A stretch of DNA of 64,000 bases from IMGVR_UViG_3300028840_008185:248001-312000; one strand, 5' to 3'. Positions 20,018 to 64,000 are shown, counted from the first letter of the stretch. Translations and numbers: made by a program. Notes: generated from the sequence alone by a model not told the origin.

Positions 20018-21802
20018 TTATGTCCACGTATTGAAATCAAATGGCGCAAATAAAGTGCTTGGAGCCACCGTTCCATATAGATTGCCAGGAACTCCCGCAC
20101 CAACATCTCCTATGGGAATGCCACCCAAAGAGTTTAACGTATTGTTAGCAACGACGCATATATTACAGCCTATCAGCCCGACAAGTGGGCCAGTACCCCC
20201 TCCAGATATTTCATCAACCATATTGCTATTTATTGTGGCATTGGTTGCAATGATCACAAATATTATGCCCACAGTGGGGGCGATGGGGTTCAAATCATTT
20301 ACAAGAAAATTATTGCCGTTTATCTGTATGTTATATATTCCAGGACCCAATGATGGAGCCGCTAATATCGCACTGCCAATTGCCGCTACACCTTGGAACT
20401 TGAAGCTGTTATCTAACACTCGTGTTCTATGTGAATCCGACAGGGCTATTACGGCGTCCCAGTTCCCTCCGGTAAATGTGCATCCATGGATAAGAGAACC
20501 TTCTTGCACGTTACCAACCATGTATTTAGAATCTCCTGAGTTCCAGTTTGTGCTTGAAAAGCCTTGAATAGTAACGTTTTCTAATTCCGTAATTCCAAAT
20601 GGGGTGGCGGGCTCAAGAGCCCCTTGTCCTCTATCACCAACTATAACTATATTCATCGTGCCAGCAGGTGCGTAGCCGTCCGTGGGAGATGATATCATAG
20701 CATTAATCAATTTAACTCTACCCTCACTCACAGTATATGCCGGGTCAGCAGCTGGTCTACCAGAAAGCTGTATAACTGGATAGTCTGTGCTCAGGGTAAA
20801 TCCATCTCTGATAGATGTTGGGATCCAGCCGCCATACATAAAAAGCCCATCGATAACGGCGTCAGCCGAAGAGATTAATATTGGACTATTACCATCGCCA
20901 TAACCAAGAACATTCTCGTTCATATTTATGCGAAGATTTTTAATTCTGAGAATATCCATTTCAGTACGTATAAAACTAGTATTTATTATCCCAGGTCCAT
21001 AAGTATACATATACAACCCATTAGCCTCAACCCTATCACCTCCAAAATCAATAACCGGAATGTTCGCTTTATATGGCTCACATCTCACAGCGCAGTCGTG
21101 TATTTTAAGGCCCGAGCTAGCTCCAGTGCTTCTAATTGCCTGACTGCCGTAGCCATCCAAAAAGAGACAATAGTTTACTAGACACCCAAAACCACTGTGT
21201 TCTAATAAAGTTGTGCCTTCTCCAATAGGCTCAAACTGGCATTGGGAGACTTGGGTCAAAATAGCGCCGGGGCCAGTAGATAAACAATAATCTTTATTAA
21301 CCGGAGCAAGTCTTGTTTGCTCCACTCTTGCTTTGATCCCAGCTTGTATGTAAATAGATCCTTCTATATCACATTGTTTAATTAGAAGATTGTCTGCATC
21401 GCTCACAACAGCCTCATACACGCCAGCGCCAAAATTAATAATCCGTATGTTTTGCATCAAAGACCCAAACGCATCTCCCGTAAAAGTAAACATAAAGGAA
21501 CCTACCTCATTTACTATTACAGGACGCGCTTCAACTCCAATTATCCTGACAGGCTTTGCAAACTCATGGGGAACCGTTATATTATATTCACCACCCCTCA
21601 CCAGAATGGTTCCACCTGACAATGCAACATCTAGGAGGGCCCTTTCCAAAGCATCTTGACCATTATACATTCCGCCCTCGGTGGCCACACCATCAGTGCA
21701 TGAAAGCACAGTTCGAGAATGGTGGTCGTTAGCCTCTATGCGTAAATCCAGGCTTGGGAAAGTGCCGCCACCAATACCACCTATGGGGCTAAAAACATCG
21801 CT
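20018..21802 (-). repeat. Diverged direct repeat, copy A (paralogous beta-helix coding region; copy B at 61742-63514)
   Basis: Colinear protein similarity from SD(V/I)FSP to the terminal WT; identical 52-nt stretch at 20679-20730 and 62394-62445. Confidence 0.9.
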
Positions 21803-22225
21803 TGATCTTGCAACTTCAAGTTCACCAACAGCGCTGGTAGCCAAAACACGCAATATGTTAGTGTTTTTTCTTATTGCTGCCTGCCAGCCATCAAACTCAT
21901 CTGCTTCTTCGTCGGCTGGAGGGCGTATGCCCTCATCTGTCTTGACCGCCGCAAGAACCCTACCTTTAATACGCCCATCTAGAGTCAGCTGTATCAAGTA
22001 AGTTCCAGCGACATCGGGCGTAAATGAAGCTGCGTCGGTTGTGGCACCTGCCATTACTGCCGCTGATCCAGATGGTATATATATAAACTCCCACTGAAAA
22101 GAAGTAACGCCGGTATTATCAAGATTGGTTAAGGCAACAAGAACACCGTCTACAATATCGTCCCTGCTCTCATTGGGCCCGCCGCTTACAGCGTTTTGCG
22201 TTATAACTATTTGTATACTAGGCAT
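20018..22225 (-). CDS. Fibre/spike-like virion protein: N-terminal PKD/Ig-like domain plus right-handed beta-helix
   Basis: SFQWEF..PSGS...ASFTPDVAGTYLIQLT (PKD-like), GGTILVRGGEY (beta-helix cap), Asn/Ile-rich coils; the C-terminal ~595 aa are paralogous to the gene at 61742. Confidence 0.72.
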   Translation of the reverse strand: MPSIQIVITQNAVSGGPNESRDDIVDGVLVALTNLDNTGVTSFQWEFIYIPSGSAAVMAGATTDAASFTPDVAGTYLIQLTLDGRIKGRVLAAVKTDEGIRPPADEEADEFDGWQAAIRKNTNILRVLATSAVGELEVARSSDVFSPIGGIGGGTFPSLDLRIEANDHHSRTVLSCTDGVATEGGMYNGQDALERALLDVALSGGTILVRGGEYNITVPHEFAKPVRIIGVEARPVIVNEVGSFMFTFTGDAFGSLMQNIRIINFGAGVYEAVVSDADNLLIKQCDIEGSIYIQAGIKARVEQTRLAPVNKDYCLSTGPGAILTQVSQCQFEPIGEGTTLLEHSGFGCLVNYCLFLDGYGSQAIRSTGASSGLKIHDCAVRCEPYKANIPVIDFGGDRVEANGLYMYTYGPGIINTSFIRTEMDILRIKNLRINMNENVLGYGDGNSPILISSADAVIDGLFMYGGWIPTSIRDGFTLSTDYPVIQLSGRPAADPAYTVSEGRVKLINAMISSPTDGYAPAGTMNIVIVGDRGQGALEPATPFGITELENVTIQGFSSTNWNSGDSKYMVGNVQEGSLIHGCTFTGGNWDAVIALSDSHRTRVLDNSFKFQGVAAIGSAILAAPSLGPGIYNIQINGNNFLVNDLNPIAPTVGIIFVIIATNATINSNMVDEISGGGTGPLVGLIGCNICVVANNTLNSLGGIPIGDVGAGVPGNLYGTVAPSTLFAPFDFNTWT

Positions 22226-22240: not shown

Positions 22241-25099
22241 TTATATTCCCAGTAAAGCTCTCATCTGGGATCTGCTTATTTCTCTGGTTGCGTTGGCGAA
22301 GCCCGCCCTCTTAAGATAAACAACAACCAATATCTTCATGCTTAGGGCTGGAAGTAAATTACCATAGCCATCGTTGTATAGATCATCAACATATATGTTG
22401 AGCAATGATGTGAGAGGATCGTAATACAACCCAACCAAATCTCTGATGGTGCTTCCAAACGTTACATTATACTCATTAGCTATTGATTGCAGCGCCGCAG
22501 AGATTTTAACCTTCCCCGAAGTGAAGTCTGAAATCTGCACGAAACTTCCATCAGCATATCTCATAGCATCTTGACCACTAGCAGTTAAACCACTGGAAGA
22601 TTCAGCCACAAAATTATCGAATAGTAGCACTCCAGAATATCCATCTAGAAACGTTGGATTTCCATATGAGTCTGTTATGGGAATGTCCAATGCTAGGTGG
22701 TTTATTTCAAGATCAACGGAGTAAAACGTTCCATCCGGATTCAAGATATTACCCGCATCAATGATCAGATTTCCCGGCACAAACCAATCATTTTGGCCAG
22801 ACGGCAAATCATCTGTAATATTTTCTGTGAAGGTTGTTGGCAAAAGCCTTCTCAAATCGAACACAATTAGATTGTCTGGAATCCAGGTTGCATAATATTC
22901 GATTTCCCAAGTTATACTTGGAAATGGCGTCGTGGTAAATCTTGAGCACGTTCCCGGAATATCGACGGTGGTAGTGAGTGGATCTAACAAACTTTCCACT
23001 TGAAGTTCCATTCTTGTGAAAGTAGAACCTGCTGGGAAAGTGCTTATAACGCCATTCACAAAATCCAATATCAGGGCCGAATCAGTAGCGTTCACTATGC
23101 CGTCCGCATTAACATCTGCCCTAAAGAATTCCGCAGCCGACATATATCCATCTATAATAAACTGCTGGCCATTGACGGTTGAAATATCGATGTTAGAGGA
23201 GCCGTATAAGGTGTTAAATGCAACGATAAGATCATTAACCGTGCTAACATCTGTCAAATTTACATCTCCATCCCCATTAACGTCTCCATAGGCATCAATG
23301 ACCTCCGTCTGACCAATTATCCTATACCTTTCCGAACAAGACGGTTCATCGGGGCTTAAAATAGAACCAACCCAATTATTTTGGGTCAGATCTGCATCAG
23401 GCACTAGCACATTGAATACATCTCCAACGGCCAACCCTGGATAAACGGTTGATCCCGTAATGCTACTAGCATTTCCTCTTGGATTCTGATCTCTTGCTCT
23501 GCCGAGAAGAACTGGGTCCGGATCGGAAGTCAACAAGGTGGTAAGAGAAGATTGATTGATTAAAGAAATCGCAGGAACGGTCGTCACTCTTGAGTATACC
23601 TGGTTTCCTGTTCTCTGATCCTGTTCTGGATCGGAAAACTCATTTGTGGCCTCTAGCAACACAAAATTATAGGTATCGCGAGTAACTGTGTAGTATGAAA
23701 GTGGCCCCTCTACATATGGAACCTCTGTGTTGGTCGCATCTGGAGCGATACGGGGCACCTCTAGGCCAAGGCCATCGTCATAACCTATTCCGTCGGAAAC
23801 CTTAACATAGCTGCCCTCGACACTGAACCACATATCGCTCGTGGTTACATTAATCCACTGCGAGCCGTCAAACACAGTCATATAGCTATTATCAGTTCTA
23901 TCGCTTGCCTCTTCTAGGAGTATATCACCTATGCTGGTGTCTCCAGATCGACCAACGGTGAACACATAATAATTTCCTGAAATTATTGGCGACCTAACCG
24001 GATCAGAGATTTCAGAACCAGTAAACACAAAATCCACTATCTGTGGAGTTCCATCTAAATGAATGCCTTGATTTATTAGATCAGCCTCATCTAATACAAG
24101 CTGAGCAATAATAGAAGGATCTGGATCAAAATCTATGGCGTCATCGGGCGTAGGAGAAACTGGGCAACTTACTTCAGTCTGGAGCGCATGCAGGGTCATA
24201 ACAATTGAACCAGACCACTCGTAGCCATCGTTCCCTGGAACTGCAGCCGAAAGTGGATCATATTCGACAGAAAGCAGAACAGAAATCTTTTGGATATTGA
24301 CGCCGCTGGCTTCAAACTTCTGGCCAATTCTGGTGGTTACGTCATCTTTAGGTATTTCCCGCTGTGTCACTGAAGCCAAACCAATGTTCAGATCAGAAAC
24401 TGATTTGTCGGGTCCAACAGCGTCTATAAGCATTTGAGAAATGCTCAGAGCCGCAGCAGGAATAAACGATCCAAAAAACTTGCTGGGTTGCCCAACTTGA
24501 GATACGACAACAGGATCCGGCGACACTTCCATAGACATAGCCTCACTAATGACACAGCGCCCGACCAAATTGTATCCATCCGCCGGGGAAGCAAGCTTCT
24601 CACTTCCATTAAGGTTTCCAGCAAAATTGTTGAAAAGAATACCCCTTATGCTTTTGTATCTGCCCCTGGTAACTTGAGTTCCGTTCTCGTTGAAGGTCAG
24701 CTCATCATGAACCAAATCACCACCAAAAGTATCTCCAATGATGGCGACTCGCGTCTGAGCCGCGCCGGCTAATCGCAAACCTGTTAGAGTGACTGCAAGC
24801 TGAACTCCCTGAACCTCATCAGAAACAGAGGTAAGGGGTGTGCCCACATATATGTTTTGACCATCAAACTGGTAACCGTCCAACAAGGTTTGCTGGGACG
24901 AGTTCAAGTCGCTACTATCAAAGATTTCTTGTCCCGTTTTAAACTCAGGAAGCACACCGCTCCCAAAGAAGTTGTTTTCGAGGGCAGCATCAATGCCTAT
25001 ATTTCTAGCCTGCTCGTCATCGAAGTCTTCCTTATCAACTTGTTGCCCGTCGTACCAATTGACCCTTTTAACATCAACGGATAATAGTTTCCTAACCAT
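22241..25099 (-). CDS. Baseplate-associated virion protein with an inserted dockerin-like domain
   Basis: N-terminal RVNWYDGQQV..EDF..EQ resembles contractile-tail peripheral/fibre-attachment proteins; paired GDVNGDGDVNLTD and ADVNADGIVNATD loops; follows the wedge genes. Confidence 0.65.
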   Translation of the reverse strand: MVRKLLSVDVKRVNWYDGQQVDKEDFDDEQARNIGIDAALENNFFGSGVLPEFKTGQEIFDSSDLNSSQQTLLDGYQFDGQNIYVGTPLTSVSDEVQGVQLAVTLTGLRLAGAAQTRVAIIGDTFGGDLVHDELTFNENGTQVTRGRYKSIRGILFNNFAGNLNGSEKLASPADGYNLVGRCVISEAMSMEVSPDPVVVSQVGQPSKFFGSFIPAAALSISQMLIDAVGPDKSVSDLNIGLASVTQREIPKDDVTTRIGQKFEASGVNIQKISVLLSVEYDPLSAAVPGNDGYEWSGSIVMTLHALQTEVSCPVSPTPDDAIDFDPDPSIIAQLVLDEADLINQGIHLDGTPQIVDFVFTGSEISDPVRSPIISGNYYVFTVGRSGDTSIGDILLEEASDRTDNSYMTVFDGSQWINVTTSDMWFSVEGSYVKVSDGIGYDDGLGLEVPRIAPDATNTEVPYVEGPLSYYTVTRDTYNFVLLEATNEFSDPEQDQRTGNQVYSRVTTVPAISLINQSSLTTLLTSDPDPVLLGRARDQNPRGNASSITGSTVYPGLAVGDVFNVLVPDADLTQNNWVGSILSPDEPSCSERYRIIGQTEVIDAYGDVNGDGDVNLTDVSTVNDLIVAFNTLYGSSNIDISTVNGQQFIIDGYMSAAEFFRADVNADGIVNATDSALILDFVNGVISTFPAGSTFTRMELQVESLLDPLTTTVDIPGTCSRFTTTPFPSITWEIEYYATWIPDNLIVFDLRRLLPTTFTENITDDLPSGQNDWFVPGNLIIDAGNILNPDGTFYSVDLEINHLALDIPITDSYGNPTFLDGYSGVLLFDNFVAESSSGLTASGQDAMRYADGSFVQISDFTSGKVKISAALQSIANEYNVTFGSTIRDLVGLYYDPLTSLLNIYVDDLYNDGYGNLLPALSMKILVVVYLKRAGFANATREISRSQMRALLGI

Positions 25100-25114: not shown

Positions 25115-28100
25115 TTATTTTATATAGCTCACAAAGGCTCTGGTGTGTCCAGGCCTCAGTCTGTTTATCAAATCTGTCAGTAATCCTTGAGCCAATGATG
25201 TGTCTATTAGCTCAAAAGTATCAATAACTTCTACCCAGAAGTCAAATATTCCTCTTGCAAGATCTCTCACAGTGGCCAGGTGCTCAACCTCAGTTGGGGT
25301 TGTGTCAAAATCTAGCAGAAGTCTCGTAAGCGCATCGCTGATAACTGGTTGTGCCGTGTTCACATTTCCAGTGTAGAGCAAATCCTTACCAATAAGCTGT
25401 CCTGGGCCACTTCCGCCCAAATAGGTAATTGTTCTCATTTCGCTTGAGAATCTCATATTGTCGAACCTAGCCATCGCCGTAAATTGGCCCGTGAAATCTG
25501 CGCCAATATGAACCGTATTGAATAGATCCTCTAGATTAATATCAGCGAGTATATTCCTAGCAGAGATAGTTCCAGCGGTCGCAGAACCCCATACTGTTGG
25601 TGAGCCATACAGATGGCCCTGGCCATAGAGCAAGCCTGTTCCGTAGCGAATAACGCCAGCCTCAGTTCCATCTACCATTAGAACCAGCCTATCTTGGTTG
25701 TCTATGTTGTTCAAATCCCAACCCACCCAGACTCGATGCCACGTATTCTTTTTCCAATAAACGGGCGCTCTTATCTGGAAGTCAGTTCCTGAAGCACTAA
25801 CCGACAACGTTAGGAAGCCAGTTTCACTCTTGTAGATGCTGAATCTATCCCCTTGGGCTGTAAGCGGCACATAAATCACATTAACGACACGAGAGTTTCC
25901 AGGCAGAGCCTGCCCAAGAGTAATGGTTATGCCGTCGCTAGCCAAACTACCTCCAGTGAAGTAGTTTGTATCACCACTGCCACCCGATATGGTCACCGAT
26001 CTCACAGTTCGAGCCCGAACTGGAAGAATTACACTAACGGCAGAGACCGCTATGGTTTCCAACTGTTGTTCAGGAGCTAAATCCACATAGAACCTTCTTG
26101 TCGGATCGTTATATGTATCCAGTATTGGGCTCACCCAAAACTCAATTGTGCCCTGATCGTTGCTGAATATGGATGCATTATCATATTGCAACGATTTTTG
26201 CTGGTTGAAGACTCCAGACTGGCCAAAACTCGAATTAACACTATTCTCACTCTGCCTAAAGGAATCGGAGAAGCTTGCGTAAAACGATGCGCTATTGGTC
26301 ACAGCGTCATTGAAATGGAATAGGCCAAGCGTTTGTATGCTGTCTTCGTATTCCTGAACAACGAGGGCGTCTGTTGTAATGGATCTTCCAGAGCTGGGAG
26401 TAAGTTCTCCACGGCCAGTATCATCTGAAACTTCGTCCAAAATACGCATCTCGTCTATTACCGCATTCGCCTGATTAGCTGAATTTAGATCAGAGCCGGT
26501 GTATAAATTATCTGGCATTTGTTCCCAAGGAACAGTCAAAAATGTTGGGAAGTCAACTTCATACCAACAGCTATGAAGCAGGAATGGCTGCCCACCACTT
26601 CGGGCAATTTCCAAAGTAATCAAACCGTTTGCGAAACCACTGTCGCCGTGCGAGGTGGTAAGTTGTCTCCAAGCCACATTTGAATAGGAATCGGCCCAAG
26701 TTGTGTTGAGAAAAATTGTGTCAGAGTCTTTAACGGTGCCCGACGGATCTAAATCAACATTGGTAATTGTATAACTGCTGGCTATGGAAGCCGGCGATGT
26801 AATATTGATAATCTTACCTATATCTTCGGCATCCCATCTGGAATAGGCATCTGAGAACTGGGCGGTTCCAACAAGCGTCTGGCCGTTTGCTCCAGCCTGC
26901 TCCTGAACTGACAAATGAACTTCCGCATATTCCCCATTATTCTCCTGCCAGTTTAAAGGATTGGCCTCTCTAACTTCCAATGTCCCAGCGGACAGCGTTG
27001 TATCAACTGGAGTGAACGACGCCAGAATATCCGTTATAGAAGTAAAAAAGCGAGTTGTAGTTTGACTACCAACAGAGGTGAAGGTCAAAGTTTCCATGCC
27101 GTAACCGTCAGTGGTATTTCCAGTTATTATAACTCTATTAAGCCCTGTGAAATCAAAATTGTCTCCGGATATAGTAGCTTTAAGCTTTCTGCCCGTTACA
27201 TTATTAGATGGTTGACAGAAATCAAATGCCCCAGCGACAAGCACTGGGATTATATGGCCACCAACGACTGTAGCCACCAGAGCGAAAACTCCCGGATCCA
27301 TTTCTACCTTTTCCACTATAATGCTTGTGATATTAATCTTGGAAATGTCCGTAGGCTGCGGCATTATTGTGTTTAGAATGTTGGTTTGCAGGTCTGGCCA
27401 AATATATACAAGCTGCCTACACCTAGCTGTAGTTAATCCATAAGAACGTAGAATAACACTATCACCGATACTTACACCATTATATATGTCAACGATTTCT
27501 TGGTAGCCATCCTCACTAAAGCCATAATCAGGAGTTAAAGTGTCTGGTGAATACAGCTCAGTCTCGGTGCCGAGAGCATCTATGGAGAATACACGAACTT
27601 TTTCGAAGCTTGGGTCACTTACCGTATCAGCCTCCATGGGATTTACAGAGAATCTTATGCCGGTCAAACTAGACACTGCTGTATAGGGAACGCCCGAGCC
27701 CGCTGGCCCAACTTCCATCCGCAGTTGATTTTCGCCAACAACAGCTCTCACAAATACGAAAGGAGATGTTTGAGTGTTGGTTCCGTCAGTCGTATCATCC
27801 AATATCATAAATTTACTTCCTACAACAACGCCCTCGGTCACAAACTGAGATCCGCCAGAGGTAAATAGATCTGAGCCAGCGACAGTTCTTCCGTCAAAGC
27901 CGCCGATGATTGGAGCGGTAGCCGAAGGTATTAGAATCTCACTAGCCTCGTCCATATATAGTGCCCCACTTGGCGGCTCCAAATATCCTCTAAATCTATA
28001 TGTATTGGGAACCTCTACGCCATCCACAAACAAGTGGAGTTCGTCGCGCATCTCTATTGTGCTAATTTTCCAAGATACTGCAATGTGATGAGTTTCCGAT

Positions 28101-46720: not shown

Positions 46721-46722
46721 TT

Positions 46723-50669: not shown

Positions 50670-50684
50670 GATACTAACACATTC

Positions 50685-51320: not shown

Positions 51321-51347
51321 ATTATTTGTTCCTCCAAAGAGTTTTTA

Positions 51348-54535: not shown

Positions 54536-54584
54536 TATACAATCCTCCAAAGATATTATATATCCTTTCAGGAATATGTTTGAT

Positions 54585-54683: not shown

Positions 54684-55184
54684 ATGCCGGTGTGTAAAAA
54701 TTGTGATGAGAAATTTCCTAATAAAATCAAAGAGAATGGGCATACATACAGCCTGGCAGGCAGGAAGTTCTGCCCCAAATGTAGCCCAATAGGTGGTAGA
54801 AACACACGTACTTACATAATTGAAGTTGAGGAGGGAAAGGCATTTTGTGCGCGATGCCAAGACATCAAGAGCATAAAGGAGTTCTATATCCGCAAAGAAA
54901 ACGGCAAACCTTTCTCATACTGCCGAAAATGCCAAAAAGAAATTAAAGACTTGAAATTACAAGAGAAACTTGATAGAATAATAGAAGAAAGAAGCGGCGC
55001 GTGCTGCGATTGCGGCACCATGCTGCCTCCACCCATTTATGAGTTCTACAAAGATGGAAAGACATATCATATCAGTAGGGCGAAAAATATGTCTCTACAA
55101 AAGCTTAAGGAAGAATTAAGAGATCACTTGATGCTCTGTAAGAACTGTTGTGCGCTTAGAAAATGGGAATTAGGGAATGGGTAA
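54684..55184 (+). CDS. Multi-zinc-finger protein derived from an HNH endonuclease, apparently lacking catalytic His
   Basis: Six CxxC motifs; GACCDCG...EF...IS...S...LKEEL....LCKNC matches a phage HNH family, but EF-HH reads EF-YK and NCH reads NCC; GGAGGTG RBS; the only convincing plus-strand gene. Confidence 0.75.
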   Translation: MPVCKNCDEKFPNKIKENGHTYSLAGRKFCPKCSPIGGRNTRTYIIEVEEGKAFCARCQDIKSIKEFYIRKENGKPFSYCRKCQKEIKDLKLQEKLDRIIEERSGACCDCGTMLPPPIYEFYKDGKTYHISRAKNMSLQKLKEELRDHLMLCKNCCALRKWELGNG

Positions 55185-56483: not shown

Positions 56484-59400
56484 TTATAGGGTGTAGTTAA
56501 CTCTTCCCTGCAAAACTGATATCGTATATGGGCCAGCAGTGTTTTGTGGCTCTAGTGATATGCCATGATGATCTTCGTATTGCATTATATTAGTTCCTGC
56601 CGGGCCGGCAGGTAATATCGTTTCATATTGATTGCCTGTGCCCTGTGCATTTTGTGCAGCCCTAAGGGTATAATAAGCTACCGATGGGCCAAATCCTCGC
56701 GACATGGACCAACCTAGTTGAAAATCACCCACTACACCGACTAAGTTATACCATATTTCAACATTGTTGATAGTAGCTCCCACAGGGACAGTTTCTGTTC
56801 CAAAACTAAAAGCCAAAAGATTAAAGGTGCTGTCATATATAGTTTTGGTGGCTATCCATCCCCCACCAAACACCAACCAACTGCATGCACCGCCGTTAAC
56901 GTCCATATCCACAACAGCTGAATGTGTAGGAAAAACAACCGAATAAGTCTGCCCCTTGTTATTTATGTCCGTATTGCCAGTTCCAGTCAAGTTTATCATG
57001 GTGGTGGCGGAAACGAAAAAGTAATTGTGTGCTACAAGGCAATCCGCCGCTCCCACTCCATTAATAACACCATCGCCACTGAACGCAGCCGCTCCTCTAA
57101 ACCAATTGTTACATATTATGTGATTGCTGGTATCCGTTACTTCTAATATTGCTCCAATCGTAGCACCAGCGTTGTGCCTGAACACATTGTCACTTATGAG
57201 ATATCCCCAAGCACCACCAGGACCAGATGCTGTAATATATACGATATCCTGTCCAGTATTGCCCTCACCAGTTACATAGTTGCCAGTGAAGATCACATTG
57301 CTCCCAGAACCTAGAGAGATATGATCCAGGCGTACCACATTTATATTCTCTGCTCCTTCAAAAAAGTTATCCGCAATCAATACATCATTAATGCCCCCAC
57401 TAATTGATAAGCAAAAACGACCGTCACGAACAAAGTTGTTGGATATAATAGATTCATTTAGGCCCTGCGAGAAAAACATGCCGTGCGATGCAGCATTACC
57501 ATAAAAGCCTGTAATAAGATTGCCAGAAATTAAAAAGTTGGTAGGCCCATCGTCAACCTGTATACCTGTCCCTATACCTTGGTCCGAGCCACCTGGATTC
57601 ACCAGAGTATTATTCGTTATCGTGAATCCATCATCTTGATTACCAGCATTTACCTCTGCACTAATCATTCTTCCATCAGCACCGGAAGTGTCTGTGCATT
57701 CTATATGATTTTTATCTATAGTTATTCTAGTTCCATCCTCAACTCTAATAAGTCTAGTTGCTGCCCCAGGAGCAGAGGATTTTAAAATGTAATTATTATG
57801 TATCAATACATCAGTCGGGTCTGTTGTAAGCACGATGGCATTATCTGAAATGCCAGTCATGGTATTATCATTTATGGTTAAGTTAGTTACAGAAGTAATT
57901 GACACGACAGTTGGAGCATCAAAAATATTGCCACTTATTTCCATGTTTGTAACATTGTTAAGAACCACAGCGATATCAACCACTCCTGTGAAAGCAGAGT
58001 TTTTAACAACAGAATTGGCCACACTGTTGTCACAATAAATAGCGCGGCCAGGATTGGTAAACAAACAGTTAGAAATCTTTATAACGTTCACGTCATCAGC
58101 CGCAATTGCAAAATTGCTTGCATTCGGATTGTCGAAAACAAATCTACAGCGTTCTATGCGTATGCCAGTTATGTCACTACCCAAGCCACCGATGAAGGCG
58201 CCTGTTAAAGTTGTTGAACCGGTTTGAAAACCCAGGTCTCTAATAGTACAGCCGTTACCAGGAATTATGGTGCTGAAGGGAGTGCTATTGGTAACGTAAA
58301 TAATTGAGTCTATTAGACTGTCACCCTCAAGTGTTGTCCCAGCAGGCAGTATAATAGTGTCAGCTGAGGCGGTTATTTCAAGATCAATTGTTCCCCTAAC
58401 GCGAATTCTCATTGGAACTGGCAAATCGGCATAAGCATTGATATAATTTACGGCAGCTTGTAACGAGGCAAAAGAGCCATGAGTTATGTCATTTTCCTCA
58501 ACGATCAGATCAATCTTGTTATCCAGCTTGTTGACAAATCTTCTCAAATCTCGTATAGCGTCCACAGTATTGCCAGCGTTAATATCCACCTGTGCTATGA
58601 TAGTCTTGTCATCACTGCTGAGAATTTCAGCAAGCGTAGGTGTGGTTAGAACACCAGACGCATAAAATCCGTCCTCAAGCATCTGAAACGCACCATCAGC
58701 ATCCACGAACACATTGTAGGTAACAGCAGCCCCGTTTTCTGGTATGGCTATGTTCTTACCACCTATAGAAAACACAGTGCCGTTTACCAGGATTTCACCG
58801 CCAGCGACACTAACCGTAGTAGTTCCGGCCACCCCAAAACCACGAATTATCCCGGCGCCGCGCAGCAAAGAGCGAGGGTATGTTATGTTGTCTCTAGTAA
58901 AGTCATCGCGCACATCTTGCCTTCCCACATTTCCAAACAGACGCAAATCTTCCAGATGTTTGAAGCTGGTCGTATTGTGAAGCACGGTGCCCACCTGCAC
59001 ATATAGCTCCTCACTAATTCTATCGAATATTTCTAAATCGATGTAGTTTATGTTGTTAGTTCCAGGATCGGCCGCAACTTCTATTTCCACATAATCTATT
59101 CCATTTACATCGTATAGCTTGAACCTAAAACCTTCAGAGTCCGAACTGGGTATTGTAACGCTCACACCAGGATTTATTATAGTCGCGCCCGATCTGTCTC
59201 CCAGGGTCACAACTCTACTTTCATACTGAATTCTCTTGTTGGGATTGGTTCTAAATGTTCTTGAGACGGCCACAATATCAAACCAGGATTCTGGATTGTT
59301 TGGCGTGCCCGCCGCATTTTGGTAGGTTAAACGTCTAGTTCCTCTCAATTGGCTGGTAACAAACTGATATCCATCCACAAACAGCTCATAAAGAGTGCGG

Positions 59401-61106
59401 TCGGTCGGAGTAGTGATGCCGAAGTAGTCAGCATATATGTCTATAGTTACATTCTCGTTGGTGCTAAAGTTATGTAGCACATTAAGGTTAGTGCTCAACA
59501 CCTGGTCAAATATCCAGGTGCCGTCGTCAGCTGTTGAGTTTTTCACCCTTACAATTCCATTCTCTTTAATGCCCAAATCATCCAGATTTACAGCAGCAAC
59601 GATTGTGTCAGAGCCATTTACTATTGCTCCCGTCGTGCTAACGATCTTTCTAACAGCAGCAATCTCATATCCATCGATATAAAATTTGCGCTCCTCAAGA
59701 CTTTGTGCTATTTCTCCTTCATTAAAGCCTAGTGCCTCCCAAGCTGTAGACCCTCCAGACGGAGCGAGAGCAGTCAGAGTCCCCTCAGGCTCGTCAAATG
59801 CCAGTCCCATCTCCCCTTTATAATGGAAAGCAATCAGCGGGCTGCCAGCAGTCGTAAAAGTATCGTTCAACACTTGCGTTAGATTTTCTGGAGTCCAATT
59901 GCTTGGGTTAGCTGAAAATGCTGTCATCGCTGCCAACACATCAATGTCTCCAGTATTTCCTGAGGCCCAACCAACTCTGATGTTCTGAACTCCAGCCGTT
60001 AAGGCTCGCACATCTAACCCACTACTTACAAGGAAAGGTGCAGCAGGTTGCACCAACTGAAGAACTTCGCCAGAAAAATCCGCTTTTTTAGTTGCAACTA
60101 TAAGATTGGCCGGCTCGGATGTTTCTTCAGAAGTTCTGTATACAGCCGCAGTGCCAGTGCCGCTAGCTGGAGAAGGATTGATAGTATTAACTAATGTGTT
60201 TGAGATTACTTCATCAATGCGCAACTTATAGGTGTTTGAACCCAAAGTTACATCAATCACATCTCCCCTGGCAGCAATCGCCAAGTTGGCTTGTGCGGCG
60301 CTGAATGTTACTCTGTTAACACCCTCCACCACTGTTGCGGCGGCAGAAGCAACAATACCAACATTGCGGTTGGTGCCAGGCAGAAAAGTTTCCTGTGTTC
60401 TTAGGATGCCATTGCTGTGTTGTCTGTCTTGGTGCTGCACCAAAGCCCTTACGCCAAGCTCATCAAGCTCTTCAAAAGCAGTCTGGCCGTCGGTTGCATT
60501 AATGAATAGGAAGTTTGAATTATCAACAGAGATTGCACTGGCGTCGTGGGCGTCTGTAGGATCCGCAATGTGATCGTCAATTCTACCTCTTATGTCCGTC
60601 ACAATCCCTTGGAGGTTTTGGGAAGCATATGGGGCCACATACCCATCAATATCACTGGTGTAGTGGCGCCCATATGTGCTTGGATGCGCAACATGCTGCG
60701 TTAGATTGTTTATATCGACAGCGACTTTGTTCTCCAAAGAGATGATGCGGACTCGATTCTCATCAATCCAAGTTTTGAGCTGGACAGTGCTATAATCCAA
60801 GTCTAGCTTGGACTCCTCTATTCCAGCAGTGGCAGCTATCATGCTATTGGTTATTGGCAATGCTACCAAACCGATAGTGGTGAGCGCCGAGGCTTTAATC
60901 GAGCCATCGGGGGCCAGCGACTGATCAAGTCGCGCAGCGACATCGGCAGCAGTTCCCTGCGGATCCAAACCAAGAGTTTCCTCAATCTGGAATACCGCAC
61001 TGCGCAAGCCGTTTATAGCATCGCCGCCAATTTCCGTTATGTTGTCGTCAACTCGCGGTAGTTCTTTATCAGTGTCGAGTTCGCCAGGATATTTGCTATC
61101 AGGCAT
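56484..61106 (-). CDS. Long fibre/tailspike-like virion protein with right-handed beta-helix
   Basis: N-terminal anchor motif INGLRSAVFQIEETLG.DPQG, H....DAHDASAIS repeat motif, FASLQAAVNY cap, many I.NN/I.GN beta-helix coils. Confidence 0.75.
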   Translation of the reverse strand: MPDSKYPGELDTDKELPRVDDNITEIGGDAINGLRSAVFQIEETLGLDPQGTAADVAARLDQSLAPDGSIKASALTTIGLVALPITNSMIAATAGIEESKLDLDYSTVQLKTWIDENRVRIISLENKVAVDINNLTQHVAHPSTYGRHYTSDIDGYVAPYASQNLQGIVTDIRGRIDDHIADPTDAHDASAISVDNSNFLFINATDGQTAFEELDELGVRALVQHQDRQHSNGILRTQETFLPGTNRNVGIVASAAATVVEGVNRVTFSAAQANLAIAARGDVIDVTLGSNTYKLRIDEVISNTLVNTINPSPASGTGTAAVYRTSEETSEPANLIVATKKADFSGEVLQLVQPAAPFLVSSGLDVRALTAGVQNIRVGWASGNTGDIDVLAAMTAFSANPSNWTPENLTQVLNDTFTTAGSPLIAFHYKGEMGLAFDEPEGTLTALAPSGGSTAWEALGFNEGEIAQSLEERKFYIDGYEIAAVRKIVSTTGAIVNGSDTIVAAVNLDDLGIKENGIVRVKNSTADDGTWIFDQVLSTNLNVLHNFSTNENVTIDIYADYFGITTPTDRTLYELFVDGYQFVTSQLRGTRRLTYQNAAGTPNNPESWFDIVAVSRTFRTNPNKRIQYESRVVTLGDRSGATIINPGVSVTIPSSDSEGFRFKLYDVNGIDYVEIEVAADPGTNNINYIDLEIFDRISEELYVQVGTVLHNTTSFKHLEDLRLFGNVGRQDVRDDFTRDNITYPRSLLRGAGIIRGFGVAGTTTVSVAGGEILVNGTVFSIGGKNIAIPENGAAVTYNVFVDADGAFQMLEDGFYASGVLTTPTLAEILSSDDKTIIAQVDINAGNTVDAIRDLRRFVNKLDNKIDLIVEENDITHGSFASLQAAVNYINAYADLPVPMRIRVRGTIDLEITASADTIILPAGTTLEGDSLIDSIIYVTNSTPFSTIIPGNGCTIRDLGFQTGSTTLTGAFIGGLGSDITGIRIERCRFVFDNPNASNFAIAADDVNVIKISNCLFTNPGRAIYCDNSVANSVVKNSAFTGVVDIAVVLNNVTNMEISGNIFDAPTVVSITSVTNLTINDNTMTGISDNAIVLTTDPTDVLIHNNYILKSSAPGAATRLIRVEDGTRITIDKNHIECTDTSGADGRMISAEVNAGNQDDGFTITNNTLVNPGGSDQGIGTGIQVDDGPTNFLISGNLITGFYGNAASHGMFFSQGLNESIISNNFVRDGRFCLSISGGINDVLIADNFFEGAENINVVRLDHISLGSGSNVIFTGNYVTGEGNTGQDIVYITASGPGGAWGYLISDNVFRHNAGATIGAILEVTDTSNHIICNNWFRGAAAFSGDGVINGVGAADCLVAHNYFFVSATTMINLTGTGNTDINNKGQTYSVVFPTHSAVVDMDVNGGACSWLVFGGGWIATKTIYDSTFNLLAFSFGTETVPVGATINNVEIWYNLVGVVGDFQLGWSMSRGFGPSVAYYTLRAAQNAQGTGNQYETILPAGPAGTNIMQYEDHHGISLEPQNTAGPYTISVLQGRVNYTL

Positions 61107-61741: not shown

Positions 61742-63514
61742 TTATGTCCACTTGTTGAGATCGAGCGGACCTAACACTCCATGCGTATATAGATTTCCTA
61801 TTGGACCAGGAGCAGCATCAACGAACGAAGGAAAACCAATGCGGGCATCTAAAACATTACTAAGTACGGTACTATAATCACAGGCAGTAAGCGAAACCAT
61901 TGGGCCAGTGCCGCCGCCACTTACATCGACTATAACATTGCTATTTATTGTAGCCCCATTAGCACCAAAAGCAAATATTGTGGCTACAGTGGGAGCAAGG
62001 GAATTCAGATCGTTTATAAGAATATTATTGTCGCTTATTTGCACATGCTCCACTACAGGGGCCAACGATGGGGCTACCAACACTGCACTCCCAATCGCCC
62101 CCACACCTGTGAACTTGAAGTAGTTGTTCTGCACTCGTGTTCTATGTGAGTCCGACAGAGCTATTACTGCATCCCAATTTCCCCCAGTAAACGTACATCC
62201 TTGAATAAGCGATCCTTCTTGCACATTCCCAACCATGTATTTAGAATCTCCTAGATTCCAGTTTGTGCTTGAAAAGCCCTGAATGGTAACATTCTCTAGT
62301 TCCATAATTCCAAATGGAGTCGCAGGTTCAAGGCCCCCTTGCCCACTGTCTCCAAGTATCACTATTGTCATATTTCCAGCGGGCGCACCACCATCCGTGG
62401 GAGATGATATCATAGCATTAATCAATTTAACTCTACCCTCACTCATAGTATATGTCGGGTCAGCAGCTGGTCTACCACTCAATTGTATCACTGGATGGTC
62501 TGTGCTTAGGGTAAATCCATCTCTAATGGTCATTGGTATCCACCCACCATACATGAAAAATCCGTCTATTACGAGATCGGCGCATGATAGTGATATAGGG
62601 TTGTTACTAGAATCACTATGACCAAGAACATTCTCGTTCATATTTATGCGAAGGTTTTGAATCTTAAGTATATCTGCCTCAGAACGTATGAAGCTAGTGC
62701 TTATTATTCCAGGGCCGTAGGTATACATATATAGTCCGTTAACTTCTGTTCTATCTCCTCCAAAGTCAATAACAGGGGTGTTTGCTTTGTATGGTTCACA
62801 TCTCACGGCACAATCGTGTATTTTAAGACCCGAGGTGCCACCTGCCCCTATAATTGCCTGAGCGCCGTAGCCATCTATAAAAAAAGTATTGCTTACAACA
62901 CAACCAAAACCATTATGATTAAGCAGTGTTACTTCTCCAACAGGTGCAAGTTCACACTGAGAAATTTCTGCTAATATGCAGCCAGGCCCCGTGCTTATGC
63001 AATCCACACCAACTGGGGTCACTCTTGTTTGCTCCACCCTTGGCCTGCGCCCGGATTGTAGGTATATTGTTCCTTCAATCTCGCACTGCTTTACCAAGAA
63101 GTCATCACAATCGCTCACGAAAGCCTGGTATGCACCAGCACCGAAGTTGATGATTTCTATGTTTTGTATTGTAGATCCATACGCATCATGCTCAAAAGTA
63201 AGCATAAATGTTCCAACTTCATTTACCACTGTAGGTCTTTGTTCCACGCCAATGATTTTTACAGGTCTTGGGAGTATATGAGGCACGGTTATATGATATT
63301 CGCCCCCTCTTACCAAGATAGTTCCACCTGTAGCAGCTACATCTAAAAGAGCCCTTTCCAACGCGTCCATGCCATTATACATGCCGCCTTCGGTGGTTAC
63401 ACCATCAGTGCATGAAATCACAGTCCGCGCATGATGATCGCCAGCCTCTATACGCTCATCCAAGCTTGGGAAAATGCCTCCACCAATACCCCCAGTGGGA
63501 CTAAATATATCACT
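61742..63514 (-). repeat. Diverged direct repeat, copy B (paralogous to 20018-21802)
   Basis: Same colinear similarity as copy A; differences are mostly at third codon positions. Confidence 0.9.
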
Positions 63515-64000
63515 AGCAGAGGCAGCATTCTGGCTGGCCAATAGAGTTGAAACATGATCCCTGACAGCACCGGCTGGCAAGCTAAGTGGGATTCCAGGCA
63601 CGAGTCCCGTCCCAATCTTTTCATATCCACCGGGACTGCCCAATTGTTCAACTATGTCATCTGGAGTGATGCGGAAATTCTGCACTCCTAGGCCTGCACC
63701 GTCAGCAAAGGTGGAGAAACTACCAGGATAGTCAAACAAAAGTAGTAGTTCTTCTAACTGGATATCCAGAGTTGGTCCAACCAAACCATTAAATACAGCG
63801 ACTTTCGGAGCCGTATCTATGTGATTATCGTTGTGTCTGAAAGCAACACCATTGACGTGCTCATCAAAGTTGGTTTCATTCACATTGATCCTAGAGCCGT
63901 AATCGTTCAGGCGAGCCACAACGGTTCCGTAAGCTCCATGTGGATTTACACCTAGCGTTTGCTCAAGTGCCAAGACAGCGCTTCTCAGATCATTGTGGTC
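61742..64000 (-). CDS. Fibre/spike-like beta-helix protein (5' end beyond the window), paralogue of 20018..22225
   Basis: Frame is open to the right edge (DHNDLRSAVLALEQTLGVNPHG...), so the TTG start in the ORF track is probably not real; the C-terminal ~590 aa align with the 20018 gene. Confidence 0.78.
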   Translation of the reverse strand, partial: DHNDLRSAVLALEQTLGVNPHGAYGTVVARLNDYGSRINVNETNFDEHVNGVAFRHNDNHIDTAPKVAVFNGLVGPTLDIQLEELLLLFDYPGSFSTFADGAGLGVQNFRITPDDIVEQLGSPGGYEKIGTGLVPGIPLSLPAGAVRDHVSTLLASQNAASASDIFSPTGGIGGGIFPSLDERIEAGDHHARTVISCTDGVTTEGGMYNGMDALERALLDVAATGGTILVRGGEYHITVPHILPRPVKIIGVEQRPTVVNEVGTFMLTFEHDAYGSTIQNIEIINFGAGAYQAFVSDCDDFLVKQCEIEGTIYLQSGRRPRVEQTRVTPVGVDCISTGPGCILAEISQCELAPVGEVTLLNHNGFGCVVSNTFFIDGYGAQAIIGAGGTSGLKIHDCAVRCEPYKANTPVIDFGGDRTEVNGLYMYTYGPGIISTSFIRSEADILKIQNLRINMNENVLGHSDSSNNPISLSCADLVIDGFFMYGGWIPMTIRDGFTLSTDHPVIQLSGRPAADPTYTMSEGRVKLINAMISSPTDGGAPAGNMTIVILGDSGQGGLEPATPFGIMELENVTIQGFSSTNWNLGDSKYMVGNVQEGSLIQGCTFTGGNWDAVIALSDSHRTRVQNNYFKFTGVGAIGSAVLVAPSLAPVVEHVQISDNNILINDLNSLAPTVATIFAFGANGATINSNVIVDVSGGGTGPMVSLTACDYSTVLSNVLDARIGFPSFVDAAPGPIGNLYTHGVLGPLDLNKWT

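What the first reader, a model, noticed from the sequence alone, without database searches (positions are those of the whole stretch)
20018..64000. Pervasive D-G-Y motif restricted to predicted outer virion proteins: candidate sequon for a phage-encoded tyrosine-modification system
Seen in sequence (manual count): exact DGY occurs about 26 times in ten structural proteins: 20018 (2), 22241 (6), 25115 (5), 31984 (1), 37317 (5), 39381 (1), sheath (1), 55170 (1), 56484 (3), 61742 (1). Variants DAY, DSYG and DEYG are also frequent. I found no DGY in the ~6,000 aa of enzymes at 1-19.9 kb, nor in the tube, tape measure, hub, tube initiator or chaperones. A rough composition-based expectation is only 3-5 copies across the structural module. 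The motif occurs in unrelated folds and appears to be gained and lost independently (SPTDGYAP vs SPTDGGAP in the paralogous fibres; DDTDDGYN vs DDTTDGTN in a shared domain), which is how a short linear recognition motif behaves. Established knowledge: Tyr O-glycosylation occurs on some Firmicute S-layer proteins, tyrosine sulfotransferases prefer acidic neighbours, and some phages and chloroviruses glycosylate their virions. Inference: DGY marks surface loops that the adjacent GT/methyl/sulfo/radical-SAM operon decorates, giving a shielded virion. Alternatives are a docking site for a decoration protein, a metal-binding turn, or a radical-SAM Tyr crosslink site.
Basis: partly seen in the sequence, partly recalled or inferred. 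Interest (0 to 1): 0.9.

Follow-up and report, generated by a model that had tools for sequence, protein, structure and literature searches.

The report
Asp-Gly-Tyr motif on phage tail surface
A three-residue motif (Asp-Gly-Tyr) is about 14 times too frequent on the outward-facing tail proteins of a whole clade of uncultured giant phages and nearly absent from their inner parts and enzymes. It behaves like a tag read by a phage enzyme, most likely the sugar-adding enzyme encoded next door.

Summary
The window, part of a ~452-kb uncultured jumbo myovirus, has 26 DGY in 14,252 aa of structural proteins, against 2.5 expected. Shuffles gave at most 10 in 1000 runs. DGY is the lone outlier among 8000 tripeptides. 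The 6,345 aa of enzymes have none.

The same holds in more than 200 loci from related phages:
- Outer tail proteins (sheath outer region, peripheral baseplate proteins, fibres, beta-helix spike): 461 observed vs 33 expected.
- Internal tail parts: 2 vs 14.
- Enzymes: 2 vs 8.
- Major capsid protein: 2 vs 4.7.

The motif is strict: DGF, NGY and EGY are not enriched, and only DAY is weakly enriched. It sits in loops. It is conserved 50% of the time where other tripeptides are conserved 13-18%. Yet it occupies about 200 different, non-universal sites.

This fits a short linear motif read in trans, not a fold element. A glycosyltransferase cluster follows the tail genes in essentially all relatives. 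Its only universal member is a divergent GT4, corresponding to the N-terminal half of the gene at 17415-19691. The sulfotransferase, radical-SAM enzyme and methyltransferases are lineage-specific and cannot be the clade-wide writer.

Best reading (about 45%): DGY is a sequon for glycosylation of the tail surface. No chemistry is shown.

The parts
22241..25099 (-). 952-aa peripheral baseplate protein with an embedded dockerin module. It has six DGY (window 24872-24880, 24572-24580, 24221-24229, 23144-23152, 22637-22645, 22364-22372).
   Evidence: The family shows 363 observed vs 14.1 expected (25.7x) over 33 distinct sites. Dockerin_1 hit at 30 bits, and Foldseek matches dockerins with TM 0.8. 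In the AF2 model all six DGY lie in loops or at the ends of secondary-structure elements, two of them in segments with pLDDT<50.
25115..31981 (-). 2288-aa baseplate or fibre-network protein with five DGY: the DGYDGYDGY tandem at 28409-28435, plus 27503-27511 and 27101-27109.
   Evidence: The family shows 462 observed vs 39.3 expected (11.8x) over 64 distinct sites, none universal.
31984..35220 (-). gp6/J-like baseplate wedge protein (1078 aa) with one DGY (33085-33093).
   Evidence: phrog_6 at E 3e-37. The family shows 83 vs 13.9 (6x), and 191 vs 23 in 120 database homologues.
37317..39371 (-). 684-aa baseplate protein with five DGY (38361-38369, 38190-38198, 37662-37670, 37455-37463, 37431-37439).
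   Evidence: The family shows 125 vs 7.0 (17.9x) over 22 sites.
51989..54550 (-). Tail sheath (853 aa) with one DGY (54086-54094) in the variable N-terminal half.
   Evidence: phrog_279. The family shows 200 vs 12.7 (15.8x). All 16 sites map to residues 47-486 and none to the conserved core at 490-853. The main sites fall in the low-confidence variable segments 64-78 and 133-251 of the AF2 model.
55170..55952 (-). 260-aa protein next to the sheath gene, with one DGY (55590-55598).
   Evidence: This single site is conserved in 54 of 58 homologues. The family shows 63 vs 3.9.
56484..61106 (-). 1540-aa beta-helix (tailspike-like) protein with three DGY (60639-60647, 59667-59675, 59367-59375).
   Evidence: Pfam Beta_helix. 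The family shows 231 vs 17.0 (13.6x) over 49 sites.
20018..22225 (-). Fibre-like protein (735 aa) with two DGY (21149-21157, 20672-20680). It is a paralogue of 61742-63973.
   Evidence: Its homologues in relatives carry 0-4 DGY each.
61742..63973 (-). Fibre-like paralogue (743 aa by ORF listing, 779 aa as called on the long contig) with one DGY (62867-62875).
39381..41990 (-). 869-aa baseplate protein with one DGY (40170-40178). Its family is not enriched.
   Evidence: The family shows 12 vs 9.8, and 7 vs 4.9 after redundancy reduction.
18513..19691 (-). N-terminal GT4 unit (aa 1-393) of the 758-aa double GT4. It is the only enzyme conserved next to the tail module in all relatives, and the candidate writer or reader of DGY.
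   Evidence: Pfam GT4/GT1. Family F1 is present in 62 loci. Single-unit homologues align to residues 1-393. 46 columns are at least 90% conserved, including an E-x7-E motif. All 61 further loci found through this protein have DGY-rich neighbours.
5483..18512 (-). Glycan synthesis and tailoring cluster: second GT4 unit, three methyltransferases, a 690-aa GT1-like protein, three GT2, a radical SAM/SPASM enzyme, a sulfotransferase, two epimerase/reductases and a GDP-mannose 4,6-dehydratase. It contains no DGY.
   Evidence: The gene content varies between relatives, and only the GT2s and an epimerase recur. The radical-SAM enzyme is closest to BtrN. The sulfotransferase's only weak hit is the CurM sulfotransferase.
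41966..51974 (-). Internal tail parts without DGY: the 1584-aa protein at 41966, tube initiator, tape measure, two chaperone-size ORFs and two tube-like proteins.
   Evidence: Clade-wide they show 1 vs 17.2. With the 35676 and 35230 families added, the internal parts show 2 vs 14.15 after reduction to 50% identity (P 8e-5).

Best explanation
DGY (with DAY as a weak variant) is a short linear motif displayed on surface loops of the phage's outward-facing tail components. These are the sheath outer region, peripheral baseplate proteins, fibres, the beta-helix spike and some small appendage proteins near the capsid gene. The motif is recognised in trans by a phage-encoded enzyme.

The most likely writer is the divergent GT4 glycosyltransferase encoded immediately after the tail genes in every relative. 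It would attach the first sugar, most plausibly to the Tyr hydroxyl, in the cytoplasm before or during assembly. The variable enzymes behind it would then extend and tailor a lineage-specific glycan. In this phage these are extra GTs, a deoxyhexose pathway, methyltransferases, a sulfotransferase and a BtrN-like radical-SAM enzyme.

The result would be a glycan-coated tail surface. Proteins that must fit inside the tail, and the enzymes themselves, avoid the motif.

Shown: the statistics, specificity, distribution, conservation, loop location and synteny. Inferred: that recognition is enzymatic, that the enzyme is the GT4, that Tyr is the acceptor, and what the coat does.
For: 1. Enrichment is extreme and unique in the window. 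It is absent from unrelated phages.
2. It is clade-wide: 1047 vs 100 in 79 loci, and 461 vs 33 in outer proteins after redundancy reduction.
3. Specificity points to chemistry, not turn propensity. DGY is 13.9x, against DGF 0.9x, DGW 0.4x, NGY 0.6x, EGY 0.3x and DAY 2.3x. At DGY sites, relatives rarely carry DGF. Pro never follows the motif (0 of 424), and Lys/Arg are depleted around it.
4. It behaves like a short linear motif. The four baseplate families alone have 131 distinct sites, none universal. Sheath, 55170 and spike add 66 more. Full conservation is 50%, against 13-18% for other tripeptides, at 40-70% identity. DGY-poor relatives carry unrelated residues at the same places.
5. Local structure is heterogeneous loops, some of low confidence. 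In the sheath all sites are outside the conserved core.
6. The topology contrast is strong. Internal tail parts show 2 vs 14 (P 8e-5), enzymes 2 vs 7.8, and capsid shell 2 vs 4.7. The depletion in internal parts and enzymes fits a promiscuous writer.
7. A GT cluster follows the tail module in nearly all relatives. The GT4 is its only universal member and keeps its catalytic-type E-x7-E motif.
8. The tailoring enzymes look sugar-directed.
Against: - No mass or chemical data exist, and no cultured isolate is available.
- The GT cluster could instead serve DNA or host-envelope modification. Its adjacency is only synteny.
- No relative without the cluster was found, so co-occurrence is untested. 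Relatives with weak DGY enrichment (L148 4.3x, L113 5.1x) still carry an apparently intact GT4.
- The GT4 matches no characterised protein-glycosylating family above threshold.
- Tyr O-glycosylation is rare, and no known sequon resembles DGY.
- The major capsid protein, the largest surface of the virion, lacks the motif.
- Solvent exposure could not be computed, because only secondary structure and pLDDT were returned.
- The depletion figures rest on related sequences even after reduction to 50% identity.
Confidence: 0.45

Rival explanations
1. DGY is a non-covalent docking motif. Exposed DGY loops would be bound by a phage protein (a decoration, cement or fibre-anchoring protein) or by a host surface component, giving multivalent attachment over the tail surface. 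No enzyme would be involved.
For: The same short-linear-motif properties apply, as does restriction to outer proteins. One DGY-rich protein carries a dockerin, a protein-protein docking module, which shows that modular docking is used in this baseplate. Several small DGY-rich or unknown proteins are encoded nearby.
Against: No candidate reader domain was identified, and no cohesin was found by Pfam. Depletion of DGY in cytoplasmic enzymes is less expected for a binding motif than for a promiscuous enzyme. About 30 sites per virion-protein set, multiplied by copy number, would need a very abundant partner. The conserved neighbouring genes are enzymes.
Confidence: 0.2
2. DGY is a structural or metal-binding element. 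It could be an Asp-Gly turn followed by a Tyr whose hydroxyl makes a stabilising hydrogen bond (similar to a tyrosine corner), or a Ca2+ site. It would be favoured in the beta-rich, environment-exposed domains of these proteins.
For: - DG is moderately enriched overall, and DGT, DGV and DGI are 1.4-2.8x.
- Hydrophobic residues often precede the D.
- One or two sites lie inside dockerin Ca2+-loop repeats of the D-x-D-x-D-G type.
- A hydroxyl-dependent structural role could explain the preference for Tyr over Phe.
Against: - Local contexts differ: end of a helix, long loops, low-confidence loops, start of a strand.
- There is no D-x-D-x-D-G flank in the logo.
- NGY, normally the better tight-turn former, is depleted at 0.6x.
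- Sites turn over rapidly and are replaced by unrelated residues or gaps in relatives whose proteins are otherwise conserved.
- Equally beta-rich internal proteins (tube, the 41966 family) have none.
- Unrelated phage tails lack the signal.
Confidence: 0.12
3. The covalent chemistry at DGY is something other than glycosylation. Candidates are Tyr O-sulfation by the 10409 sulfotransferase, a radical-SAM Asp/Tyr crosslink by the 12748 enzyme, Tyr phosphorylation or nucleotidylation by a host or unlinked phage enzyme, or spontaneous Asp-Gly isoaspartate formation tuned by the neighbouring Tyr.
For: An acidic, Lys/Arg-poor neighbourhood is typical of Tyr sulfation sites (established knowledge of TPST substrates). 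A Sulfotransfer_3 protein and a SPASM radical-SAM enzyme are present in the window. Asp-Gly is the most succinimide-prone dipeptide (PMC12447389, found).
Against: - The sulfotransferase and radical-SAM genes are absent from the cluster in most DGY-rich relatives.
- The sulfotransferase has no detectable similarity to TPST. Its only hit is the CurM sulfotransferase at E 0.014.
- Known Tyr-sulfation sites have the acidic residue directly before Tyr, not two before.
- The radical-SAM enzyme's best solved relative is BtrN, which acts on an aminocyclitol. PqqE scores only E 3e-3.
- No kinase or Fic-type gene was seen in the window.
Confidence: 0.1
4. The enrichment is an artefact of paralogy, internal repeats, composition or a DNA-level signal.
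For: Two fibre paralogues share one site, and one protein has a DGYDGYDGY tandem.
Against: - 23 sites remain after removing these.
- Flanks are unrelated.
- Codons vary.
- Shuffles and the Markov model do not reproduce the count.
- The signal replicates in redundancy-reduced families from more than 200 loci.
Confidence: 0.01

Closest known systems
Virion glycosylation in mycobacteriophages (Che8, Myrna and others; Freeman et al. 2023, cited in PMC12619734)
   Same: Phage-encoded glycosyltransferases next to structural genes are proposed, and in that case shown, to decorate virion proteins in the cytoplasm and give a glycan coat.
   Different: In the mycobacteriophages the glycans sit at the C-termini of the capsid and tail-tube subunits, as described in PMC12619734. 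Here capsid and tube lack the motif, and the candidate sites are a defined tripeptide scattered over loops of sheath, baseplate and fibres. No sequon of this kind has been described for phages. Nothing is chemically shown here.
General O-glycosylation of Bacteroidota with the sequon D-(S/T)-(A/I/L/V/M/T) (own knowledge: Fletcher, Coyne and Comstock work)
   Same: A three-residue sequon that begins with Asp and contains the hydroxyl acceptor. It occurs on many unrelated proteins and is gained and lost freely.
   Different: In that system the acceptor is Ser/Thr directly after Asp. Glycosylation is periplasmic, from a lipid-linked glycan, and acts on exported host proteins. Here the hydroxyl residue is Tyr two positions after Asp, with Gly between, and the targets are cytoplasmically assembled phage proteins. 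DSY and DTY are not enriched.
Tyrosine O-glycosylation of S-layer proteins in Paenibacillus alvei and Thermoanaerobacter (own knowledge)
   Same: Precedent for bacterial O-glycans linked to Tyr on a surface lattice protein.
   Different: That system uses a membrane oligosaccharyltransferase and lipid carrier, has very few sites per protein, and no DGY-type sequon is known to me. No homologue of such an O-OTase was seen in the window.
Cytoplasmic GT4 protein O-glycosyltransferases of Gram-positive adhesins (SdgA/SdgB on Ser-Asp repeats; GtfA/B on serine-rich repeats)
   Same: Soluble GT4 (GT-B) enzymes attach the first sugar directly to a hydroxyl side chain in a short, Asp-containing or repetitive motif of a surface protein.
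   Different: Only the second, ordinary GT4 unit of 17415 gives weak hits to the SdgA/SdgB models (58 and 48 bits against a cut-off of 800). The clade-universal unit hits no named family. The acceptor there is Ser in long repeats, not Tyr in isolated loops.
Chlorovirus PBCV-1 major capsid protein glycosylation by virus-encoded enzymes at atypical sequons (own knowledge)
   Same: A large virus carries its own multi-enzyme glycan pathway, including methylated and deoxy sugars, and uses non-canonical recognition sequences on structural proteins.
   Different: PBCV-1 is a eukaryotic virus with N-linked glycans on Asn of the capsid protein. Here the virus is a phage, the targets are tail proteins, and the candidate acceptor is Tyr.

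Membership tests
Sequon-directed protein glycosylation (generic) | A short linear motif with fixed residues including a hydroxyl or amide acceptor, occurring on many unrelated target proteins | tested here: met
   DGY is 13.9x enriched in seven outer protein families, with strict D, G/A and Y requirements. About 200 distinct sites with unrelated flanks.
Sequon-directed protein glycosylation (generic) | A glycosyltransferase or oligosaccharyltransferase that recognises the motif | not testable with these tools
   The candidate is the universal GT4, supported only by synteny. A scan for covariation between GT4 residues and DGY density was inconclusive.
Sequon-directed protein glycosylation (generic) | A glycan demonstrably attached at the motif | not testable with these tools
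   Needs mass spectrometry. No isolate is available.
Bacteroidota O-glycosylation sequon D-(S/T)-(A/I/L/V/M/T) | Acceptor Ser/Thr immediately after Asp | tested here: not met
   The enriched motif has Gly after Asp and Tyr third. DSY is 0.9x and DTY 1.2x.
Mycobacteriophage-type virion glycosylation | Phage-encoded GTs adjacent to the structural module | tested here: met
   A GT4, GT2s and further GTs lie directly after the baseplate and fibre genes in the window and in 62 related loci.
Mycobacteriophage-type virion glycosylation | Targets are the capsid and tail-tube subunits | tested here: not met
   Major capsid family 2 vs 4.65; tube families 0 vs 1.7 and 0 vs 1.1.
Tyrosine O-sulfation (TPST / RaxST type) | A tyrosylprotein sulfotransferase homologue present wherever the motif is enriched | tested here: not met
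   The sulfotransferase 10409-11197 has only a weak hit to the CurM sulfotransferase (E 0.014) and none to TPST. It has no homologue in the clusters of most DGY-rich relatives.
Tyrosine O-sulfation (TPST / RaxST type) | Acidic residue directly preceding the Tyr | tested here: not met
   Gly occupies the -1 position. DDY is 0.3x and DEY 0.9x.
Radical SAM/SPASM peptide crosslinking (PqqE or RiPP maturase type) | A maturase co-occurring with the substrate motif | tested here: not met
   The radical-SAM gene 12748-13740 has no homologue in the clusters of any sampled relative outside the window's own contig. Its best solved relative is BtrN at 2e-11, with PqqE at 3e-3. All NCBIfam hits are far below their cut-offs.
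EF-hand / dockerin-type Ca2+ loop (D-x-D-x-D-G) | Acidic residues at -2 and -4 relative to the D of D-G | tested here: not met
   The flank logo shows no such pattern. It applies only to the site or sites inside the dockerin repeats of the 22241 family.
Tight beta-turn (Asx-Gly) structural motif | Uniform hairpin context and tolerance of Asn for Asp and Phe for Tyr | tested here: not met
   Contexts are heterogeneous in the AF2 model. NGY is 0.6x and DGF 0.9x.

The most novel reading that the evidence does not exclude
A widespread clade of uncultured 300-480-kb phages encodes a cytoplasmic, sequon-directed tyrosine O-glycosylation system. A divergent GT4 would recognise D-G-Y on exposed loops and prime a lineage-variable glycan (methylated, sulfated and deoxy sugars in this phage) that coats the tail sheath, baseplate periphery and fibres. 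All other phage proteins would be purged of the motif. This would be the first defined glycosylation sequon in a phage and the first Tyr-specific sequon anywhere.
Probability: 0.4. Interest if true: 0.9.

Novelty: new variant of a known kind. Interest (0 to 1): 0.8.

Why it matters
If DGY is a sequon, it gives a simple sequence rule for predicting which phage surfaces are glycan-coated. It also points to a single candidate enzyme (the universal GT4) and a three-residue tag that could be tested and then used to glycosylate proteins on tyrosine.

It would show that giant environmental phages invest a multi-gene pathway in coating their tails. That bears on host recognition, on protection from proteases or from adsorption to decoys, and on how virion surfaces evolve.

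No paper in the searched library describes it.

Tried and rejected
- **DNA-level motif:** rejected, because nine different codon combinations encode the 26 sites.
- **Paralogy or tandem repeats:** rejected, because they account for only 3 of the 26 sites.
- **General property of phage tails:** rejected by phage G, Tunturi_5 and T4. T4 shows a mild 9 vs 2.6, spread one per protein and including non-virion genes.
- **A longer hidden motif:** none appeared in 424 de-duplicated sites.
- **Replacement motif in DGY-poor relatives:** none found.
- **Co-occurrence with the operon:** uninformative. Every relative with enough downstream sequence has the GT4 cluster, except L094, where it may lie further on. 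Searching with the GT4 family returned only members of the same clade among the best 80.
- **Gene presence or absence tracking DGY-poor loci:** none found.
- **GT4 residue covariation:** the three poorest loci deviate at the near-invariant Tyr100-Asp101. These columns rank only 9th and 10th of 188, so clade structure can explain the pattern. This is a lead only.
- **Annotation of the DGY-rich proteins:** PHROGs and Pfam give almost nothing. Foldseek of the 22241 model finds only the dockerin.
- **Naming the enzymes by NCBIfam or PDB sequence search:** nothing reached threshold.
- **Identity with the 'moraphage' lineage (PMC12619734):** not established.
- **Solvent accessibility:** could not be computed, because model coordinates are not returned.

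Full report
**What the window is.** All genes lie on the minus strand. The window is part of IMG/VR contig 3300028840_008185 (318 kb). The same phage occurs on a 452,619-bp ENA contig and a 452,631-bp JGI contig.
- No cultured phage is close. The sheath reaches at most about 30% identity to phage G, Tunturi_5 and others.
- In transcription order the window holds fibre-like and beta-helix proteins, then sheath, two tube-like proteins, chaperone-size ORFs, tape measure, tube initiator and a 1584-aa protein.
- Next come several baseplate proteins, including gp25-like and gp6/J-like wedge subunits, then two very large peripheral proteins and a fibre.
- A 14-gene sugar cluster follows. It holds a double GT4, a GT1-like protein, three GT2, three methyltransferases, a sulfotransferase, a radical SAM/SPASM enzyme, GDP-mannose 4,6-dehydratase and two epimerase/reductases.
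- The window ends with a tubulin/PhuZ-like gene, a UvsW-like helicase and an AAA protein.

**The observation.**
- Composition predicts 2.5 and a first-order Markov model 5.3.
- In 1000 real shuffles the maximum was 10.
- DGY is the single outlier among all tripeptides: p 5e-18, against 5e-5 for the runner-up. Shuffles never produced any tripeptide below 1.3e-6.
- 26 of the 42 Gly-Tyr dipeptides follow Asp.
- Codon choice varies, so selection acts on the protein.
- Unrelated phage structural regions show nothing comparable.

**It is a property of a whole clade.** The wedge protein has hundreds of homologues on environmental contigs of up to about 470 kb.
- Loci were fetched around the wedge gene (79 loci), the 22241 family (79), the sheath (80) and the GT4 (80).
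- In the first set DGY occurs 1047 times against 100 expected.

Observed vs expected DGY by orthologous family:

| Family | Observed | Expected |
|---|---|---|
| 22241 | 363 | 14 |
| 25115 | 462 | 39 |
| 37317 | 125 | 7 |
| wedge (31984) | 83 | 14 |
| sheath | 200 | 12.7 |
| 55170 | 63 | 3.9 |
| beta-helix 56484 | 231 | 17 |
| 41966 | 1 | 8.9 |
| 41966 (wedge-anchored loci) | 0 | 12 |
| tube initiator | 0 | 2.8 |
| tape measure | 0 | 2.2 |
| tube proteins | 0 | 2.8 |
| 35676 | 2 | 2.2 |
| 39381 | 12 | 9.8 |

After reducing each family to representatives below 50% identity:

| Class | Observed | Expected | Ratio |
|---|---|---|---|
| Outer proteins | 461 | 33.3 | 13.9x |
| Internal tail parts | 2 | 14.15 | 0.14x (P 8e-5) |
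| Cluster enzymes | 2 | 7.8 | 0.26x (P 0.016) |

- The major capsid protein, found by walking the long contig, has no DGY. 150 representatives of its family have 2 against 4.65 expected.
- Several proteins between the capsid gene and the window end are again rich. The 294-aa protein has 6, the 446-aa protein 4, the 518-aa fibre-like protein 7, the 672-aa protein 7, and a 99-aa protein 2.

**Anatomy of the motif.**
- Specificity is strict. In the rich families DGY is 13.9x, while DGF is 0.9x, DGW 0.4x, DGH 0.5x, NGY 0.6x, EGY 0.3x and SGY 0.8x. DAY is 2.3x and DSY 0.9x.
- In 424 de-duplicated sites the flanks carry no longer motif. Lys and Arg are depleted from -7 to +11, Pro never follows Tyr, and Asp, Tyr and Gly are mildly enriched nearby.
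- The four baseplate families contain 131 distinct DGY sites, the most frequent held by 35 of 62 members. Sheath, 55170 and 56484 add 16, 1 and 49.
- Where a member lacks DGY at such a site it has a gap (22%), DAY, DSY, DGV/I/T/N or unrelated residues, but hardly ever DGF.
- In pairs at 40-70% identity a DGY is fully conserved 50% of the time, against 13% for average tripeptides, 18% for other DGx and 16% for other xGY.
- A few relatives with all four families have nearly lost the enrichment (L063 2 vs 0.9, L079 2 vs 0.9, L077/78 4 vs 1.0). They show miscellaneous residues at the sites of their DGY-rich sisters. The motif is therefore not needed for folding.

**Structural context.**
- The AF2 model of the 22241 protein (pLDDT 80.7) places its six DGY in six different settings: at the end of a helix, in three loops (two with pLDDT below 50), after a helix inside the dockerin module, and at a coil-to-strand junction.
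- In the sheath family all 16 sites lie between residues 47 and 486 and none in the conserved core at 490-853. The most used sites (76, 154, 182, 189, 206) fall in segments the AF2 model cannot fix (64-78 and 133-251, pLDDT below 50). This is the variable part of the protein.
- By established knowledge of contractile sheaths, the conserved C-terminal domain forms the inner layer and the additional domains face outward.

**The neighbouring enzymes.**
- In nearly every relative the 22241 homologue, sometimes with a fibre gene after it, is followed by a GT4 of about 375 aa. After that come GT2s, two unknown proteins of about 270-340 aa and further variable enzymes, then an epimerase, the tubulin gene and the helicase.
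- Only the GT4 is universal (62 loci). It corresponds to residues 1-393 of the window's 758-aa protein, whose second half is an added ordinary GT4.
- The family has 46 columns at least 90% conserved, including an E-x7-E pair typical of GT4 enzymes. These are kept in DGY-poor relatives too.
- Searching viral contigs with this family returned only clade members among the best 80. All 61 scorable loci have DGY-rich neighbours at 8-30x.
- The sulfotransferase, radical-SAM enzyme, methyltransferases and GDP-mannose dehydratase are not part of the common core.
- The sulfotransferase has no detectable similarity to tyrosylprotein sulfotransferases. The radical-SAM enzyme is closest to BtrN, which oxidises an aminocyclitol. 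Nothing reaches an NCBIfam cut-off.

**Interpretation.**
- The motif combines strict residue identity (including the Tyr hydroxyl), loop location, unrelated flanks, many independently arisen sites, purifying selection on existing sites, and dispensability in some lineages.
- It also shows a roughly 100-fold contrast between outward-facing and internal or cytoplasmic proteins. Together these are the signature of a short linear motif recognised in trans. They do not fit a turn or metal site, for which Asn and Phe variants and internal beta-rich proteins should take part.
- The depletion outside the target set suggests that carrying the motif in the wrong protein is costly. That fits an enzyme acting on any accessible copy in the cytoplasm.
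- The only conserved enzyme genes next to the targets are glycosyltransferases. The only universal one is the divergent GT4.
- I therefore rank sequon-directed glycosylation of the tail surface first (about 0.45), with Tyr as the likely acceptor. A non-covalent docking motif is second (0.2), a structural or metal element third (0.12), and other chemistry on Tyr or Asp-Gly fourth (0.1).
The proposed involvement of the sulfo- and radical-SAM enzymes as writers is not, and the coat is a tail and appendage feature, not a whole-virion one.

**Limits.**
- No chemistry is shown.
- Synteny is the only link between the motif and the GT4.
- No relative lacking the cluster was available.
- Solvent exposure was inferred from secondary structure, confidence and domain position only.
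- The depletion statistics use related sequences.
- A hint that the three DGY-poorest loci carry substitutions at the near-invariant Tyr100-Asp101 of the GT4 did not stand out in a column-wise scan.
- Literature searches found no description of a DGY motif or of sequon-directed phage glycosylation.

Noticed in passing
window 23069-23290 (aa 604-677 of the 22241-25099 protein): A type I dockerin module (two Ca2+-loop repeats) is embedded in a phage baseplate protein and conserved across its family. The Pfam Dockerin_1 hit is above cut-off, and Foldseek gives TM 0.8 to cellulosomal dockerins. No cohesin partner was found in the window. It may anchor another tail component or bind a host cohesin-like protein.
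   Followed up: partly
window 3932-5386 and 2398-3951: A tubulin/FtsZ-family (PhuZ-like) gene and a UvsW-like helicase lie directly after the sugar cluster. This order (GT cluster, epimerase, tubulin, helicase) is conserved across the clade.
   Followed up: partly
window 17415-19691: The GT4 is a fusion of two GT4 units in this subclade (relatives at about 56-59% identity share it). Most relatives have only the first unit. The first unit also hits Pfam 'GT4-conflict' (PF20706).
   Followed up: partly
window 41966-46720: The family of this 1584-aa protein has essentially no DGY (1 vs 8.9 and 0 vs 12 expected) and matches no Pfam or PHROG family. Its position after the tube initiator suggests a hub or other internal baseplate component.
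   Followed up: no
window 28409-28435: A perfect DGYDGYDGY tandem in the 2288-aa protein. The 59%-identical relative has DGYDGYDSQ at the same place.
   Followed up: partly
window 54684-55184 (+): This is the only plus-strand ORF also called as a gene on the long contig (166 aa, between the sheath and the 55170 gene). It overlaps the start of the 55170 gene by 15 bases. Its function is unknown.
   Followed up: no
L102, L105, L115, L120, L132, L135 (family F12, about 340 aa, inside the GT cluster): A protein family encoded among the glycosyltransferases of some relatives is itself DGY-rich (8 vs 0.3 expected), unlike all the enzymes around it. It may be a structural or carrier protein.
   Followed up: no
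L133:17282-20002: A 907-aa fusion of GT2 and GT6 domains sits in a relative's cluster. GT6 (E 1e-40) is the family of blood-group-type galactosyl/GalNAc transferases.
   Followed up: no
L147:18843-19544: A GIY-YIG/NUMOD3 homing endonuclease is inserted between the epimerase and the tubulin gene in one relative.
   Followed up: no
L249:2553-6278: A 1241-aa protein upstream of the capsid gene has an endolysin-like segment (residues about 860-960) and no DGY. It may be an ejected or internal lytic protein.
   Followed up: no
L164 (phage T4, 75-124 kb): T4 has 9 DGY against 2.6 expected, one per protein and including non-virion genes. This is a mild excess, far from the present signal.
   Followed up: partly
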